A DNA stretch of 63,451 nt, filler included, from Octopus bimaculoides (lineage: Eukaryota), in NCBI RefSeq assembly GCF_001194135.2. It is 5 parts of 5 records of this genome, joined end to end, with 100 filler letters (N's around TTAATTAATTAA, not from the genome) between each part and the next. Parts side by side here need not be neighbours in the genome. Positions count along the whole stretch, not along the records: positions 18,284 to 34,126 come from NC_068989.1; 4 more parts are not named here. One strand, given 5' to 3'. Below, in pieces: positions 15,531 to 22,789 of this stretch. A program made the translations under genes and the position numbers. Under the pieces are notes generated by a model that was not told the DNA's origin, did not search any database, and worked only from the letters and a program-made list of their open reading frames with translations. The first letter of the stretch is position 1; the number at the start of each line of letters is the position of its first letter.

Positions 15531-16267
15531 TTTGTCGGGGTTTAACAATAATTCAATCAAACGAAATGGGTAAATACAAAACTAGAATTGGGTATAGAGA
15601 GTAAGCAGAACGAAAGTGTAGTTAGAGAAAAGTCGATGATGAAATAATGTGTTTTATAACCCGTTAGTATTTATATTTTTTTATTATTAAAAGATTCAAC
15701 TGTTTTAATAATAACATTTTTGTATTAACTTTTGTGGCATGGTGAATGATGCACCAGAAAAAAAAAAGAGGAAGTGACATTCAGTAATAGTATGTTACCC
15801 GACGTACATTTTGCAAATAACGCTCTAAGCGTTGCAGATAACGATTTTTTATTGATCAACAAATAAAGCACCAATCAGTAGACAATTTGTTCGCTGGTAG
15901 CATGGACAAAACCATCGACTATTCCCAATCTCAAAGTTCCGGCTACTTCTTGGCTTAAGAGACACAACATGTTGATACACCGGTGCGCACCCAAAACCGC
16001 TGGGCAGTGAAATGTTTGTATTGCATTCTTTGTTGTCTTAAAAGAAGTTATTCTCCTAAAACATAAACTACAGCACTCAGCATGTTTTCCGACCGAACCA
16101 TCCTAGACGTGTTAAGAAGAAATATGCAAATATTCATTCCAGATCTCACTGTAGACAGTGCAGATAACAGTTGCTTGATTAATGTTGTTTATGGAGCACT
16201 GACTCAATGTTAATATAAGAAAACGGTAAGTTGTCAAATGTTTATTTTAAGGCTACAATAATAATAG

Positions 16268-18283: not shown

Positions 18284-18380
18284 CCAAGCAGCTCATTTTC
18301 ACCCATATACACGCGTGCTGAACATCGCTCAATTTCCCAAACCAACGCCAGCAAGAACATAACCTCCTTGGCGGGGGTAA
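18284..18380 (-). mobile_element. Helentron/HINE-type 5' terminus, cut by scaffold end
   Basis: Minus strand reads TTACCCCCGCCAAGGAGGTTATGTT…, the same terminal motif as at 21060 and 61536. Confidence 0.65.
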
Positions 18381-18512
18381 AAAAAATAACACAGCCATAT
18401 GATTTTTAGAAAAAAAAACCTCTAAAAACAGGAATCATCTGAAGCAGTTATAATACATCAATGACAACAACAAGATAGTTTCACCATACAACTAAAAAGG
18501 AACAACAATTAC

Positions 18513-20066
18513 CTACAACTTGAGTGAGATACACGCAACATCATGGTCTGAAAAGTATCAGTCGGTTACGGTGACTTGTGGACGCCGATCCTGGTTCACG
18601 TAAACATAATCTAGCAGGCTACCATAGTCGGTGGCGGGTTTTTTGACTAGTTGGTCGAGCCCAAACTGGTTCATAGTTGTCAAAATCTCATGGTTAGGGG
18701 AATCAAGGTGATCCACGTTGAAATCACCAAGGACGATGGTCATGTACAGATGACTGGTGTAGGCTGTTGTTAAGTTGTAAAAAGCCAAAGTAGTACTGCT
18801 TGTCGGATGTTGTCTCAAGATAGTCAATGAGCTTTTGTCGTATGTCGAGCCCATCGATGTTCTGCTCTCCAAGTGAAGTGAGAGATGTTGATACAGCATG
18901 AATGAAGCAGTTACCATCCGCAGGGATCTGCTTTATCTTCAAGTTACGCGTCTTAGCCAGATGTTCCAGCATGCAGTAACTGTTCCCAGTTGGCATGGGT
19001 GACAGAGGAGCAGGGGATTCTGGTTGATCAACTTCCACCTCCTCTGGACAGGCTTTGGCTATTGCTTCCCACAGCCCTGGATCATCATCTTCAGACCGAT
19101 TTTCCCAGTCTGTGCAGATGACGATGTCCTTACAGAAAGGGTTGTTCTGCTTCATCCAGTTGAGTACCTCCATCACCTTTTTAGGCTAAATATATTTGTG
19201 CATATAATACCCTTTGTAGCAGAGCTTTCTTTTCAGTTTCAGAGCTACCACTTCTGCTGTGTCAGGAAGCCTCAGCAACAATGACACCACAGGTTGTAGC
19301 TTTTATGGCACATTTACTGCACTACCATGGATGGCTTTTTGTCCTCCTTTTGGCAGACCTACAAACTTCCTAAATGGGATCCTCTGACTGATCAGTCTCA
19401 GCTCTAAAGGACTCAGGTCAGATAATTCTGGTGGTATTACATCCAGCCCCAAGCCATTGATCCATGATTGAATTGGGACTTTCCATGCTTCATCGACAAA
19501 TAGCAGGTGTTGCAAACCCATGATTCGTCATATGTTATCATTCCACTGCTTGCTTTAAGAATGTTGTCAATTGTTCTGTTTGTGGGATATTTTTCAGCCT
19601 TCATCTCCAAAACTGATGGTCGGTAATGCAGTCGGTGACAAGAGCAGTAAGCATAGATTGGTCTTTCCTCTATCTTAGCCATGAAGACTGCAGCACTTTC
19701 TTCCACAACCAATTCATCTTTGCTCTACGACCTTGCATTCTGTTTTTCTCTATGATACATCGAACCTTAGCTGCTTACGGTGTTTCTTGCTGCCTATGCC
19801 TGTGCATTCCTGCCCTGACAGACGTACGGCGAGTTTCGGCAGCCTCCGGCGTTTCGTTTACCCTATGTCTTCGCTTTTGTGCACTGTCAGTCGCACGGCG
19901 ACTGTCGGCAGCCGCTAGTGCCTCTTCCTGCCTTTTCTTTTTCATGCGCTCTGCATTTTCTTTCTTTCGTTGCTCCACACTTTTAGATCTAGAGGGAGGT
20001 ATGACTGCTGTGGTTGAATGTTTTGCTAAAGTAGGCCTACTATCTGATAAGTCACTCCTGTAAGAT
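18513..20066 (-). mobile_element. Helentron coding remnant: N-terminal Cys-rich domain, OTU protease, AP-endonuclease C-terminus; Rep/helicase absent
   Basis: CSCHRLHYR…CNTC…NGLGLDVIPPELSDLSPLELRLISQRIPF…LPKGGQKAIHGSAVNVP*…LKLKRKLCYKG…WMKQNNPF; then QIPADGNCFIHAVS (OTU); then IVLGDFNVD…TDYGSLLDYVYVN…D*YFSDHD (APE). Multiple stops and frameshifts. Confidence 0.85.
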
Positions 20067-20904
20067 CAGCTGGTGTCTCACTGAAGCTCTTTTACGAGTT
20101 ATATTTTTCAAGCACAAGATTCAAGTATGTGAAATTGTAAATAAAGTGCAACAGTTTCTACTACCATAAAAAATGGTTCTGCGTGTTACTGAGAAATTTA
20201 TAGAGAGCGAAACAAAGCTTCTTTTAAGCAAATAAAATAAATCTACTACTCCATCTAGAAGTGCTGGTGTATCCGTGATCGTGTCTGCAAGTGATGGTGT
20301 GTGTGAGTCTAGAGCAAGTGAAAGTGTTTCAGAAAATGATTAATTTCAGGCTTTGTGCCTATGGTAGAAGAGATTATTCTTAGACACAACTGGAGCTGTG
20401 TGTATAGTTCACTATCAGTTGTTTTCAACAACTAATCAGGTCAGTATGAACAGTTTTCAATATAAGCTACTTTTAAAAGAGGTATCTGTCTACTTACCAA
20501 ACTAATCCTACGTACCTAGTTTATATCCCTCTGTGGTCAGTATAGTATGAATCATCCCTCAAGGGTCCAGCATCAGTTGTTGCTACCACTGCCTCCCCAC
20601 CCCTGTTGCTGCTTTTAGCGACCCTTGAGTATGTTAGTGTCATTTAATGTCTGAACTGTTTCGCTGCCGTTTGTTTATGTAGTTTGACCTCTTTATACAT
20701 CAGTTTCTAGTAAGATAGATACGCGAGTAAAATTACTAAGAGAGAAACGAAAATAAAATTTTGGAAGCAGCAACGCCACCATATGTTACGTGAAAATGAT
20801 GAACGTGTTTTCAAGGGAGATAATCAGAGAAATACTTCAAACAATGTAACATTGTAACACTTCATGTAAAGTGAATATAGCAAGTGAAAAATCCTTCTCT
20901 ACCA

Positions 20905-21060
20905 AAATTTCATCATCTGTTCCTTGTGACATTACCACCTTTTCCTGCAAGTTTCATCAAATACCGTTCACATCTTTTTGAGTTATTTTGCACACAGACG
21001 GACAGACAGACAAACCAATGCCAATGAAAACATAACTTCTTTCCTTGGCGGAGATAATAA
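20905..21060 (-). mobile_element. Helentron/HINE-type 5' terminus, probable left end of the 18513-20066 element
   Basis: Minus strand TTATTATCTCCGCCAAGG…GTTATGTTTTCATTGG…(GTCT)n…ATAACTCAAAAAG…GATGAAACTT, about 1 kb upstream of the coding remnant on the same strand. Confidence 0.7.
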
Positions 21061-21121
21061 AGAGTAAAGGTAATAAAGAAGAATAAAGGAAAAAGAATAA
21101 CGTTCACAACTCATCTTTTTT

Positions 21122-21360
21122 CCAGAGGAAACAGCTGTAAGACTTCAAATTCTTCTACCTTTACTCTTTATTCTTCTATTTACTCCTTTATCCTTCTATT
21201 TTATTTCTTGTAAACTGTGAATTTCATTCCTTGTAAATTGTAAATTTTCCCTGTCTGAAATATTCATACCACTGATGACGGAATGCTCAGCGCGTAGCCA
21301 TACGAACCTACCGCCTGGGTTATCCCAGAAACGGCTGTAAGACTTCAAATTCACCTTACC
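21122..21360 (+). mobile_element. Penelope-like terminal tandem repeat with hammerhead-like core
   Basis: gaaac(a/g)gctgtaagacttcaaattc at 21128 and 21328 (200-nt spacing), with CTGATGA at 21272-21278. Confidence 0.55.
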
Positions 21361-21588
21361 TTAATTGAATTATTCTAAATGACCTGAGACACTTGTTCTG
21401 TCTTGGTTTTGATTTTTCCTCTAATATAATATATACTTGTTATAACGGAACCCTAATACGGATCCCTAGCACTGATCTTGGAACCTAACCGTCGACCAAC
21501 TTTAGCACTTACTCAGCATACCTATTCGTTTAAATCACAAGTGATTTAAAACCCTCATATTCTTTATATTTATATATATGTATATATA

Positions 21589-22369
21589 CAGGGGTTGGAC
21601 AAAATAATTGGAATAGTAGAAAGTTAACTCCAATATTTCAGTGGGTCATTATATTACGAATATCCATCCAAATTATGTATTGTAGATGGTTTTATTTATC
21701 TAATTTAATGATTATTTCTATTTCTTTTTCAGATCGTAGCATAAATTAAGCTAAGATACGTGACCTCACTGAGTTCGAAAAAGGGAAAATTGTTGGAGTT
21801 CGAGTGGCAGGAGCTTCCGTCAGCAGAAGTTTATGTGTGGAAGCATTCCGGAGAAGCTTTTAATCCTAACTTTCTTTTTCCTACAATGAAGACGGAGGAG
21901 GGTCTGTGATAGTTTGGGCAGCCATTTCATGGAATTATCTTAATCCAATCGTTGCCCAGCATGGTATGATCAGTAGCAATGATTATCTGAATATTTTGGT
22001 AAATCAAGTCCTTCTCATGGTCCAGACATTATTCCCTGATGGTAAGTGTAGCTTCTGAAGAGCATAGCAGTGAGCTACAACACATGGAGTGCCCCCCTCA
22101 ATGTCTAGATCTTAATATTATTGAGCATTTGTGGTGCATCTTGGAGTGAAAAGTTAGACGTCATTACTCTCCACCGTCGCATCTACAACAGCTGGAGCAG
22201 GTTTTGCAGGAAGAATGGCTCAAGATTCCTCTCAATGAAGTCAGGAAGCTGTACGAATCAATTCTTGGACGCATCGAAGCTATTCAGAAAGTTAAAGGGG
22301 GACCGACTCCATATTAACTAAATATTTATTAAATTTAACACGTGTTCCAATTATTTTGTCCAACCACTG
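21589..22369 (+). mobile_element. Internally deleted Tc1-family DNA transposon
   Basis: TIRs CAGGGGTTGGACAAAATAATTGGAA / TTCCAATTATTTTGTCCAACCACTG, TA on the left flank. Fragments DLTEFEKGKIVGVRVAGASV and PPQCLDLNIIEHLW. Confidence 0.92.
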
Positions 22370-22461
22370 TTTATATAAATATATATATATATCGTCAATG
22401 TGTCATATATCCGAAAAAGAAGCTTACTCTAAAAGTTAAAGCAGTAATGTATATACATAAA

Positions 22462-22729
22462 GTTAAATATATGTCCGGTCATAGAGTGACCAATAGTTTT
22501 GGATTCATAAAGCGCTTAGCTTTATAGACGATTTATCAAACTCTAATGGTCGAGGGCATACATCCTCTCTTCAAACCCTTTTGAAAAGAGGTTATAAGAG
22601 AGATTATAAGAGAGGTTTGAAGAGAGGTTATATGCCTTCGGTTATTAGAGTCTCACGAGTCGTCTATCAACCTAAGCGCTTTATGGATGCGAAACCATTG
22701 GTCACTCTATGACCGGACATATATTTAAC
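22462..22729. mobile_element. Foldback MITE
   Basis: 33-bp perfect terminal inverted repeat gttaaatatatgtccggtcatagagtgaccaat. Imperfect pairing continues to the centre. TTAA at both ends. Confidence 0.88.
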
Positions 22730-22789
22730 GTCAAGTAAATGCACAATCAACAAATTACCAAGTTAAAACCAGGGCTTATAAATAGCTTT

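What the first reader, a model, noticed from the sequence alone, without database searches (positions are those of the whole stretch)
18513..21060. Helentron derivative: OTU protease joined to AP-endonuclease with Rep and helicase removed
Seen: in order on the minus strand, a Helentron-type left end, a charged helical region, the Cys-rich N-terminal domain (LKLKRKL…NNP), an OTU catalytic motif (DGNC) and the C-terminal third of an AP-endonuclease (GDFN…LD…SDHD). OTU sequence passes to out-of-frame APE sequence at about 18745-18780, where the HUH-Rep and PIF1 helicase should lie. Established: some Helentrons encode OTU and APE accessory domains. Inference: cephalopods host or hosted an OTU-bearing Helentron family, a transposon-borne putative deubiquitinase. 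It is the likely mobiliser of the HINE at 61536. This copy is non-functional.
Basis: partly seen in the sequence, partly recalled or inferred. Interest (0 to 1): 0.7.

Follow-up and report, generated by a model that had tools for sequence, protein, structure and literature searches.

The report
Decayed, internally deleted octopus Helentron transposon

Summary

**Anatomy, on the minus strand:**
- a Helentron 5' terminus at 21056, with its subterminal inverted repeat
- a 5' UTR
- about three degenerate 23-aa STPR-like repeats
- a Cys-rich region plus DUF6570 (Pfam E 2.6e-16)
- the N-terminal (Cys-loop, DGNC) half of an OTU domain
- out of frame, the C-terminal third of an AP-endonuclease, joined at 18746-18740

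**What is missing.** Frameshifted full-length relatives carry the order STPR-like repeats, DUF6570, OTU, Rep, PIF1 helicase, APE. Against them, about 5.1 kb is absent: the OTU His loop, Rep, the helicase and two thirds of APE.

**Origin of the APE.** It is Helentron-type, fused to the helicase C-terminus, and not LINE-derived.

**New here:**
- The same junction lies at the orthologous locus of Octopus vulgaris, so the deletion predates that species split and is not an assembly artefact.
- Both orthologues have decayed neutrally since then (dN/dS 0.8, private frameshifts and stops).
- The element does not end at 18513. After 133 nt of 3' UTR comes a mini-HINE (18379 to the piece edge).
- A flank reconstruction suggests the whole ~2.8 kb block is one T^T insertion that ends at the HINE's 3' terminus.

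No paralogous copy with this junction was found. Helentrons carrying OTU and APE are already described, so interest is low.

The parts
20897..21056 (-). Helentron 5' terminal region (left terminal sequence). The terminus is T|TATCT at 21056. The subterminal inverted repeat TCTCCGCCAAGG lies at 21054-21043 and is followed by a GTCT/GTTT microsatellite-like stretch.
   Evidence: An nhmmer profile of ~300-nt HINE copies from metagenome contigs hits 21055-20897, E 3.1e-28. The same 5' region lies 0.7-0.75 kb upstream of the ORF start in L004 and L001, and at the same 5' terminus in L129. L129 and L001 are independent insertions, and their homology begins exactly at this kind of terminus.
20003..20896 (-). 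5' untranslated region of the element.
   Evidence: It lies between the terminal region and the position that aligns to Met1 of the L004 ORF (tblastn). From 20872 downward it is conserved at about 90% with the O. vulgaris orthologue.
19718..20002 (-). Charged, Arg-rich region of about three degenerate 23-aa STPR-like repeats. The start codon is mutated (ATA at 20002-20000) and there is an in-frame TAA at 19777-19775.
   Evidence: tblastn with the L004 N-terminal ORFs, E 9e-8. The 23-aa period is read directly from the sequence. Relatives P0013, P0056, P0107 and P0158 pass the Pfam STPRs cut-off. This copy does not.
19117..19712 (-). Cys-rich (CxC...CxxC) region plus DUF6570. It carries a 1-nt deletion at about 19483, a TAA at 19305-19303 and a TAG at 19188-19186.
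   Evidence: Pfam DUF6570 E 2.6e-16. 80 homologues down to E 1e-109. The 1-nt deletion is private to the window when compared with O. vulgaris.
18742..18984 (-). N-terminal half of an OTU cysteine-protease domain (Cys loop, DGNC at 18918-18907). The variable loop and the His loop (GE.HYV) are missing.
   Evidence: 88% identity to P0070. Alignment with intact relatives shows G and C of DGNC invariant (D nearly so: V in P0070) and the missing NGEWAD...HYV part. OTU fold confirmed for intact relative P0001: OTUD3 4bou, TM 0.80.
18740..18746 (-). Deletion junction, OTU ...QSSVH (tacatg) joined out of frame to APE (accatcgtc = TIVLGDFN). About 5.1 kb is missing relative to L004.
   Evidence: Coordinates. 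OTU homology ends at L004 ORF residue 259 and APE homology resumes at L004 15921. The identical junction ATCTGTACATGACCATCGTC is present in the O. vulgaris orthologue.
18513..18740 (-). C-terminal third of a Helentron AP-endonuclease (GDFN...D...SDHD), with an in-frame TGA at 18560-18558 and the natural stop TAG at 18515-18513.
   Evidence: Pfam Exo_endo_phos E 3.2e-6, profile positions 148-225 of 225. 52.6% identity to the L004 APE and 47% to the L129 APE. Relatives have the APE fused to the helicase C-terminus.
18380..18512 (-). 3' UTR remnant of the Helentron. It contains no 3' subterminal repeat or terminal hairpin of its own.
   Evidence: The tail of paralogue-derived protein P0084 (LLFLFSCMVKLACCCH) equals a window reading frame at about 18500-18460. 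No CCTTGGCGG-like motif is found in it.
18284..18379 (-). Mini-HINE. It has the 5' end TACCCCCGCCAAGGAGGTTATGTT... and then its 3' part ...GCTGCTTGG, which the piece edge cuts. About 35 nt are missing, including the 3' subTIR remainder, the hairpin and the terminus.
   Evidence: HINE profile hit 18379-18338, E 4e-7. A complete orthologous copy lies in O. vulgaris at L130 10570-10698, ending ...CTTGGTGGAGGTCTGCGCTCTCCGAGTATTTTTCTATT.
21057..21100 (-). Host flank immediately 5' of the element. It is one arm of an inverted repeat whose other arm is at 21160-21230, and it serves as a paralogous 'empty site'.
   Evidence: The window upstream flank was joined to the O. vulgaris downstream flank. The join aligns continuously across the junction with window 21150-21230 (+). 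Score 94, against shuffles of 48.9 +/- 5.9 with a maximum of 70.

Best explanation
The region is a dead, non-autonomous remnant of a Helentron (HLE2-type rolling-circle transposon), about 2.8 kb long. It comes from an octopus family whose intact members encode one polyprotein, in this order: STPR-like DNA-binding repeats, a Cys-rich region with DUF6570, an OTU cysteine protease, HUH Rep, a PIF1 helicase and a C-terminal AP-endonuclease.

An internal deletion of about 5.1 kb removed the OTU His loop, Rep, the helicase and the first two thirds of the APE. It joined the remaining pieces out of frame at 18746-18740.

The copy keeps a genuine Helentron 5' terminus (21056) but has no 3' terminus of its own. 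Its 3' UTR runs into a mini-HINE. The whole block, from the 5' terminus to the HINE's 3' terminus just beyond the piece edge, behaves as a single insertion between two T's. The likeliest history (inferred) is that a HINE sat in the 3' UTR of the donor and rolling-circle transfer stopped at the HINE's terminator.

The insertion and the deletion both predate the split from the O. vulgaris lineage. By the published octopus neutral rate that split is roughly 15 My old (inferred). Both orthologues have decayed neutrally since then.

The copy encodes nothing functional and does nothing today.

Shown: the domain identities, the missing segment, the shared junction, the orthology, the neutral decay and the termini.
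Inferred: the order of deletion and insertion, termination at the HINE's 3' end, and deubiquitinase activity of intact family members.
For: - Domains.
- Full-length relatives with the same domain order: L004, L129, P0124 and P0158.
- APE fused to the helicase: P0085, P0097, and L002 with an 1,849-aa DUF6570/Rep/PIF1 ORF followed by an APE ORF.
- Termini: the homology boundaries between L129 and L001, and at least 120 HINE loci sharing the 5' 19-mer. The complete copies extracted from them (30) have the 3' CCTTGGCGG subTIR and most end ...CTAGTT.
- Same junction at the orthologous O. vulgaris locus: P0094 and L130, collinear with the window from 30046 to 18284.
- Neutral decay: 90% identity, private indels, dN/dS 0.80, substitutions by codon position 37/31/31.
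- Single T^T insertion.
- OTU fold in an intact relative.
- Literature: Helentrons with OTU, APE, subTIRs, a TT target and frequent deletion derivatives (PMC4067079). DUF6570 as an HLE2 marker (PMC11417382). Helitron-like elements annotated in O. vulgaris (PMC13282606).
Against: - No full-length copy from the window's own genome could be examined. The 5.1-kb size and the exact parental sequence at the junction are therefore inferred from relatives that are 53-58% identical.
- The empty-site reconstruction combines the window's upstream flank with the O. vulgaris downstream flank. It uses a paralogous inverted-repeat arm, not a true empty allele.
- The O. vulgaris orthologue lacks the 5' terminus, through a deletion of about 0.9 kb that also removes part of a neighbouring Tc1-like element. 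The 5' end is therefore seen in one species only.
- Whether the deletion happened before or after insertion is unknown.
Confidence: 0.88

Rival explanations
1. There were two independent events, not one composite. The mini-HINE inserted first at the T^T site. A Helentron then inserted immediately 5' of it, or the order was reversed, and the Helentron later lost its own 3' terminus.
For: Helentrons and HINEs prefer T-rich targets and often nest or lie in tandem (PMC4067079; tandem arrays in L128). The mini-HINE has a complete 5' end of its own, preceded by a T-run.
Against: No Helentron 3' subTIR or hairpin lies between the APE stop and the HINE. The outer boundaries (Helentron 5' end and HINE 3' end) reconstruct one uninterrupted host sequence with a T^T site. 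That fit is not expected if a further deletion had been needed.
Confidence: 0.25
2. The junction marks an amplified non-autonomous subfamily: the deletion happened in a donor, and the 2.8-kb derivative was then copied many times by intact Helentrons.
For: [quoted passage not shown] An independent derivative that runs from mid-OTU to the 3' end exists in another species (L001/L127 against L129). The window unit has usable 5' and 3' termini.
Against: An exhaustive HMMER search with the junction-spanning ORF found only one other protein with the junction, P0094, and its locus is the orthologue, not a paralogue. This test is weak, because the octopus entries are mostly gene models.
Confidence: 0.15
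3. The APE fragment is an unrelated LINE (CR1/RTE-type) endonuclease remnant that merely abuts a 3'-truncated Helentron.
For: Pfam also scores Exo_endo_phos_2, the 'endonuclease-reverse transcriptase' model, at 27.8 bits. By established knowledge, Helentron APEs are thought to derive from CR1-like LINEs.
Against: The closest relatives are APEs fused to PIF1 helicase C-termini (P0085, P0093, P0097). All seven long hits that were scanned have the match at the extreme C-terminus, next to PIF1 and with Helitron_like_N and/or DUF6570 where the protein is long enough, and none has an RT. No RT follows in the window. The orientation and order match a Helentron.
Confidence: 0.02
4. The OTU-to-APE joint is an assembly chimera between two Helentron copies.
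For: The piece comes from a gapped scaffold, with N runs at 25672-25920 and 27835-27864, and lies in repeat-rich DNA.
Against: The identical junction is present in an independent chromosome-level assembly of another species, at the collinear locus.
Confidence: 0.01

Closest known systems
Helentrons / HLE2 rolling-circle transposons (Poulter 2003, by knowledge; Thomas et al. 2014, PMC4067079; HELIANO, PMC11417382)
   Same: - DUF6570, the marker of HLE2.
- OTU upstream of RepHel.
- An AP-endonuclease fused to the helicase C-terminus.
- 12-nt subterminal inverted repeats about 2 nt from the 5' end and about 40 nt from the 3' end.
- A short 3' hairpin.
- Insertion between T and T.
- A tendency to produce deletion derivatives.
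   Different: - This copy lacks Rep and the helicase, the defining enzymes, along with half of OTU and two thirds of APE.
- It ends in a HINE's 3' terminus, not in its own.
- The family carries STPR-like repeats, which HELIANO reported almost only in HLE1.
HINE / DINE-1-like non-autonomous Helentron derivatives (PMC4067079)
   Same: The 5' terminal 160 nt of the relic and the mini-HINE at 18379-18284 share the subTIR CCGCCAAGG and the microsatellite-like stretch. The 3' motif TCTGCGCTCTCCGAGT, seen in the O. vulgaris orthologue of the mini-HINE, is also shared with ~300-nt HINEs found in at least 120 metagenome contigs and with the full-length L129 element.
   Different: The 2.8-kb unit still carries recognisable coding remnants, whereas typical HINEs have none. 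The mini-HINE is only about 130 nt long.
Zebrafish Helentrons encoding VTD and OTU deubiquitinase domains (Erven et al. 2022, PMC9741609)
   Same: They are Helentrons with a cysteine-protease (DUB-type) module upstream of RepHel. That paper also reports VTD-bearing Helentrons in molluscs. The distant relative L002 has a Herpes_teg_N (VTD) domain in place of OTU.
   Different: The octopus family has OTU, not VTD. The paper states that DUB activity of transposon OTU domains has not been tested. The window copy has lost the His loop in any case.
OTU deubiquitinases OTUD3, OTUD5 and OTUD1, yeast Otu2, and nairovirus L-protein vOTU domains
   Same: The predicted fold of intact relative P0001 matches OTUD3 with TM 0.80. 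The Cys-loop sequence VPGDGDCFFH matches vOTU entries 7y5m and 11ny with E about 7e-7.
   Different: Sequence identity is only 13-20% over the fold. No biochemical data exist for this family.

Membership tests
Helentron (HLE2) | Encodes an HUH Rep (Helitron_like_N) and a PIF1-type helicase. | tested here: not met
   No Rep or helicase homology anywhere in the piece (tblastn with the L004 and L002 ORFs). Both are present in relatives L004, L129, P0124 and P0158. The window copy is therefore a derivative of the family and not an autonomous member.
Helentron (HLE2) | AP-endonuclease domain fused C-terminally to the helicase. | tested here: met
   The C-terminal third is present. Its relatives are helicase-APE fusions, and the match sits at the C-terminal end of the seven 804-2,076 aa hits that were scanned.
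Helentron (HLE2) | DUF6570 domain, the marker that separates HLE2 from HLE1 (PMC11417382). | tested here: met
   Pfam E 2.6e-16, 60.7 bits against a cut-off of 24.3.
Helentron (HLE2) | Subterminal inverted repeats (2-4 nt from the 5' end, 38-60 nt from the 3' end) and a 3' palindrome. | tested here: inconclusive
   The 5' subTIR is present at 21054-21043, 2 nt from the terminus. The 3' subTIR and hairpin belong to the mini-HINE, are cut by the piece edge, and are seen only in the O. vulgaris orthologue. Hairpin folding in related ends is weak to moderate.
Helentron (HLE2) | Insertion between T and T without target-site duplication. | tested here: met
   The joined flanks reconstruct CTTTACTCTTTAT^TCTTCT when compared with the paralogous inverted-repeat arm. 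The caveat is that the flanks come from two species and the comparison sequence is a paralogue, not a true empty allele.
OTU cysteine protease / deubiquitinase | Catalytic Cys loop (D-G-N/D-C). | tested here: met
   DGNC at 18918-18907. G and C are invariant across 8 relatives; the Asp is replaced only in P0070.
OTU cysteine protease / deubiquitinase | Catalytic His loop and a complete OTU fold. | tested here: not met
   The window sequence stops at QSSVH, before the NGEWAD...GE.HYV segment that is present in P0001, P0004, P0008 and P0070. Pfam covers only 44 of 128 profile positions. The fold is confirmed only for intact relative P0001.
OTU cysteine protease / deubiquitinase | Ubiquitin or ubiquitin-like isopeptidase activity. 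| not testable with these tools
   PMC9741609 states that transposon OTU domains have not been assayed.
HINE (non-autonomous Helentron derivative), for 18379-18284 | Shares both termini with Helentrons, has no coding capacity, and inserts at a T-rich target. | tested here: met
   Profile hit E 4e-7 at the 5' end. A complete ~130-nt orthologous copy with 3' subTIR, hairpin motif and ...CTATT end. It is preceded by a T-run.

The most novel reading that the evidence does not exclude
The block may not be a private wreck. It could be a member of a mobilisable composite family that was created when rolling-circle transfer terminated at a HINE nested in the 3' UTR. On this reading, the recurrent and independent loss of Rep and helicase with retention of the STPR, DUF6570 and OTU Cys-loop module would reflect a trans-acting role for that N-terminal module, such as end-binding, regulation or a dominant-negative effect. 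The recurrence is seen here and in the L001/L127 derivative of another species, where a 517-aa ORF is still open.
Probability: 0.06. Interest if true: 0.45.

Novelty: new member of a known kind. Interest (0 to 1): 0.15.

Why it matters
It matters little in itself. It is one decayed copy of a transposon class whose architecture, with OTU and APE accessory domains, DUF6570, subTIRs, a TT target and deletion derivatives, is already published. Helitron-like elements have also already been annotated in Octopus vulgaris.

It has three modest uses:
- It documents an octopus Helentron lineage with the domain order STPR-like repeats, DUF6570, OTU, Rep, helicase, APE. It ties a very widespread ~300-nt HINE (subTIR CCTCCGCCAAGG) to that kind of autonomous element.
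- It gives a dated, orthologous pair of neutrally evolving relics that could calibrate TE decay in octopods.
- It offers a plausible example of a Helentron derivative that ends at a nested HINE's terminator.

Whether transposon OTU domains are deubiquitinases remains open. That question has to be addressed with intact copies, not with this one.

Tried and rejected
**Steps that led nowhere**
No read depth, no junction support from reads and no expression data could be obtained, and read laying could not be used.
- Exact look-up of five window ORFs in the protein collection found none of them.
- The locus of O. bimaculoides gene model P0007 is not on record. P0007 carries DUF6570, an OTU fragment, a pre-helicase piece and a full APE. 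Whether it represents another deletion derivative or a spliced model over a degenerate full-length copy is unresolved.
- The 120 metagenome loci carrying the HINE 5' 19-mer contain no Helentron ORFs. They define the HINE but not its autonomous partner.
- Pfam STPRs is not detected in the window's charged region, even at E 10. The STPR assignment rests on relatives and on the 23-aa period.
- Pfam found nothing convincing for the other ORFs of the piece. The stitched Tc1-like translation gave only a weak DDE_3 hit.

**Ideas considered and rejected**
- A LINE origin of the APE.
- An assembly chimera.
- Purifying selection on the retained N-terminal module. dN/dS is 0.80 for the window against O. 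vulgaris and 2.3 for L001 against L129.
- A 2-3 nt microhomology (TGA) at the junction. It is possible, but it depends on guessed parental codons, so I do not claim it.
Full report
**Observation**

I read the minus strand from 21400 to 18284 in three frames.

- Pfam scores DUF6570 at E 2.6e-16 on the stitched frames.
- Exo_endo_phos scores E 3.2e-6 on the last 78 profile positions.
- OTU is a weak, N-terminal-only match (E 0.12; 44 of 128 positions).
- The OTU identity is secured through relatives. The segment is 88% identical to an Octopus bimaculoides protein that continues into Helitron_like_N (P0070). It is 42-61% identical to proteins that pass the Pfam OTU cut-off.
- Exact coordinates: DGNC at 18918-18907; OTU ...QSSVH ends at 18742; the junction tacatg|accatc lies at 18746-18740; SDHD at 18551-18540; the natural stop at 18515-18513.
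- The conceptual ORF is broken by a mutated start codon (ATA, 20002-20000), four in-frame stops (19777, 19305, 19188, 18560) and a 1-nt deletion at about 19483.

**What is missing**

Two frameshifted but full-length relatives from ENA assemblies give the parental architecture.

- L004 is 53% identical at the protein level. It carries, in order, 23-aa charged repeats, DUF6570 with OTU, Helitron_like_N (E 2.6e-33), PIF1, and a helicase C-terminus running straight into an APE.
- L129 is 58% identical. It has a 906-aa OTU plus Helitron_like_N ORF, followed by a PIF1 ORF and an APE.
- In L004 coordinates, window homology stops at residue 259 of the DUF6570/OTU ORF and resumes at 15921. About 5.1 kb is therefore absent: the OTU variable and His loops, Rep, the helicase and the first two thirds of the APE.

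**Origin of the APE fragment**

The fragment is of the Helentron kind and not the LINE kind.

- A search with a fuller octopus APE found P0085, in which the helicase C-terminal motif (QAYVALSRV...) is directly followed by the APE.
- The same search found P0089, which lies immediately after an 1,849-aa DUF6570/Helitron_like_N/PIF1 ORF in L002.
- An exhaustive HMMER search with the junction-spanning window ORF gave 142 hits. The seven long ones that I scanned (804-2,076 aa) all carry the match at their extreme C-terminus and have PIF1, with Helitron_like_N and/or DUF6570 in the three longest. Two pass the STPRs cut-off.
- No reverse transcriptase appears anywhere.

**Ends of the element**

The sequence CTCCGCCAAGG... 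at 21053 looked like an unrelated MITE, but it is the genuine Helentron left end.

- L129 and L001 are an autonomous-type copy and a deletion derivative at different loci in the same assembly. Their homology begins exactly at T|TATCCCGCGAAAAGCGGGAT... It ends at ...GCTTTCGCGGGATCTGCGCTCTCCGAGTGCC(T-rich)TTGTT|.
- A scan of JGI metagenome contigs for CCGCCAAGGAGGTTATGTT returned at least 120 loci.
- The complete copies extracted from them (30; mostly ~300 nt, 314-nt consensus) read T|TACCTCCGCCAAGGAGG...GCCTTGGCGGAGG(~27 nt with a short hairpin)CTAGT|T.
- These features match the published HINE/Helentron signature: subTIRs 2-4 nt from the 5' end and 38-60 nt from the 3' end, a 3' palindrome and a TT target (PMC4067079).
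- A profile of these HINEs hits window 21055-20897 (E 3e-28). It also hits the regions 0.7-0.75 kb upstream of the ORFs in L004 and L001 and the corresponding 5' terminal region of L129, and window 18379-18338 (E 4e-7).

So the relic keeps its 5' terminus. The object at 18379-18284 is a separate mini-HINE cut by the piece edge. No 3' subTIR or hairpin lies between the APE stop and the mini-HINE.

**The same junction in Octopus vulgaris**

The representative search turned up P0094, a 112-aa O. vulgaris protein (CAI9728486.1). It reads OTU Cys loop...YTSHLYMTIVIGDFNVD. That is the window's own junction peptide, including the out-of-frame OTU residues.

- Its locus is L130 (OX597822.1, 115.34 Mb). 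It is collinear with the window from 30046 down to 18284 at 80-88% identity, so it is the orthologous locus and not a second insertion.
- Relic against relic, identity is 90%, the junction is identical, and each side has private lesions:
  - window: a 1-nt deletion at 19483 and the TGA at 18560
  - O. vulgaris: a 46-nt deletion in OTU and a 1-nt deletion in APE
- dN/dS is 0.80, and substitutions fall 37/31/31 over the three codon positions. This is neutral decay.

These results rule out an assembly chimera. They place both the insertion and the deletion before the split of the two lineages. With the neutral rate used for octopus TEs (0.0036 per site per My, PMC13282606), the 0.107 pairwise distance corresponds to roughly 15 My. 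That is compatible with the published O. vulgaris/O. bimaculoides split of 13-33 My. The window species is therefore an octopus at about that distance, possibly O. bimaculoides. This is inferred and was not shown.

**One insertion or two**

- The O. vulgaris orthologue shows the mini-HINE complete (L130 10570-10698). Nothing Helentron-like follows it.
- O. vulgaris has lost about 0.9 kb that includes the Helentron 5' terminus and the end of a neighbouring Tc1-like element. The 5' end is therefore seen only in the window.
- I joined the window's upstream flank to the O. vulgaris downstream flank. The result is a sequence that aligns without interruption to the other arm of an inverted repeat at window 21150-21230. 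The score is 94, against 48.9 +/- 5.9 (maximum 70) for shuffles. The site reads ...TTTAT^TCTTCT....

I therefore think the whole ~2.8 kb block, from the Helentron 5' terminus to the HINE 3' terminus, went in as one T^T insertion. The likeliest reason is that a HINE nested in the donor's 3' UTR supplied the first terminator that rolling-circle transfer met. This step is inferred. A two-event history remains possible, and I put it at about 0.25.

**Function of the family**

- An AlphaFold model of intact relative P0001 is confident only in the OTU part (pLDDT 72-92).
- That part matches OTUD3 (TM 0.80), OTUD5, OTUD1, yeast Otu2 and nairovirus vOTU structures.
- By sequence, the Cys loop matches vOTU entries at E about 7e-7.
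- Intact relatives keep the DG(N/D)C Cys loop (Asp replaced in P0070) and, where the domain is complete (P0001, P0004, P0008, P0070), the GE.HYV His loop.
- Deubiquitinase activity is a reasonable inference, but it is untested for any transposon OTU (PMC9741609).
- The window copy lacks the His loop and is dead in any case.

**Is retention of the N-terminal module meaningful?**

A second, independent derivative keeps the repeats, DUF6570 and most of OTU and loses Rep and the helicase. This is L001/L127, which lacks 4.3 kb relative to L129. However, dN/dS between L001 and L129 is 2.3, from 5 synonymous and 38 non-synonymous changes. I see no sign of selection.

**Comparison with what is known**

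Everything here fits published Helentron/HLE2 biology:

- OTU upstream of RepHel and an endonuclease downstream
- DUF6570 as the HLE2 marker (PMC11417382)
- subTIRs, a TT target, HINEs and frequent deletion derivatives (PMC4067079)
- cysteine-protease modules in Helentrons, including molluscan ones (PMC9741609)
- Helitron-like elements annotated in O. vulgaris (PMC13282606)

The only small departure is the presence of STPR-type repeats in an HLE2 lineage.

**Verdict**

The finding is a new member of a known kind and has low interest.

**Limits**

- No genome-wide search of octopus assemblies was possible, so the copy number of the junction is unknown beyond the orthologue.

Noticed in passing
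window 21566-22392 (+): An internally deleted Tc1/mariner-type element with 26-nt terminal inverted repeats (CAGGGGTTGGACAAAATAATTGGAA). Its stitched transposase remnants (GGGSVIVWAAISW..., ...LDLNIIEHLW...) give only a weak DDE_3 hit (E 0.032). The O. vulgaris orthologue keeps the N-terminal transposase half that is deleted here, but has lost the end that faces the Helentron.
   Followed up: partly
window 21058-21100 and 21160-21230; also 21128-21163 and 21328-21363: The host sequence next to the Helentron 5' end is itself a repeat. It forms an inverted repeat of a T-rich motif (CTTTACTC/CTTTATTCTTCT), and there are two 36-nt direct repeats 200 nt apart. One arm served as a paralogous empty site. 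The nature of this host repeat was not determined.
   Followed up: partly
window 22448-22577 / 22614-22743: A 130-nt inverted repeat, 83% complementary with a 36-nt loop, which looks like a foldback or MITE. Most of window 21948-22653 has no counterpart in the O. vulgaris orthologous locus.
   Followed up: no
window 24700-28700 and 32900-33970: Dense microsatellites and low-complexity DNA (AC, AT, CTA/CTG, TATC and similar), with assembly gaps at 25672-25920 and 27835-27864. The long 'ORFs' listed there are repeat artefacts.
   Followed up: no
window 28947-29432 (+) and 30967-31236 (+): Two ORFs whose text recalls GIY-YIG endonuclease and Penelope-like element motifs (CxxC...NIVYRC...YFYIGAS......EEWEIINNLKEDHTIII). 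Pfam gave no hit. This is only a lead from memory.
   Followed up: partly
P0158, P0107, P0013, P0056 (relatives); window 20002-19718: STPR repeats (Pfam PF21107, up to E 3.6e-21) occur in proteins that also carry DUF6570; P0158 also has Helitron_like_N, and P0158 and P0107 have PIF1 and Exo_endo_phos, so they are HLE2/Helentrons. HELIANO reported STPRs almost exclusively in HLE1.
   Followed up: partly
L001 and L127 against L129 (ENA ERZ26859043): An independent Helentron deletion derivative lacks 4.3 kb, from mid-OTU to 158 nt before the 3' end. In L001 it keeps an open 517-aa STPR-like/DUF6570/truncated-OTU ORF. L001 and L127 are about 95% identical over 21 kb, so they are haplotigs or a duplication. 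dN/dS against L129 is 2.3, so there is no selection.
   Followed up: yes
L128 8500-15200 (ENA ERZ26859043): Tandem and partly inverted arrays of rearranged Helentron pieces (5' terminal region, DUF6570 part, inverted 3' end) with a period of about 2.9 kb. There are several copies of the 5' terminal region.
   Followed up: no
The complete copies extracted (30) are mostly ~300-nt HINEs. The host organisms are unknown. This could reflect strong conservation of the termini across distant hosts, or horizontal spread.
   Followed up: partly
P0007 and P0093 (O. bimaculoides gene models): Both join the pre-helicase segment (...DELDRA..DLKRMEPPED.WDA...) almost directly to the helicase C-terminus and a full APE, skipping the helicase core. 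P0007 also skips Rep. They are either further deletion derivatives or models spliced over degenerate copies.
   Followed up: partly
L002 4413-10648 (ENA ERZ25072490): An apparently intact distant Helentron. It has an 1,849-aa ORF whose N-terminus carries a Herpes_teg_N (VTD-type deubiquitinase) domain in place of OTU, followed by DUF6570, Rep and PIF1. A separate 215-aa APE ORF starts 39 nt downstream.
   Followed up: no
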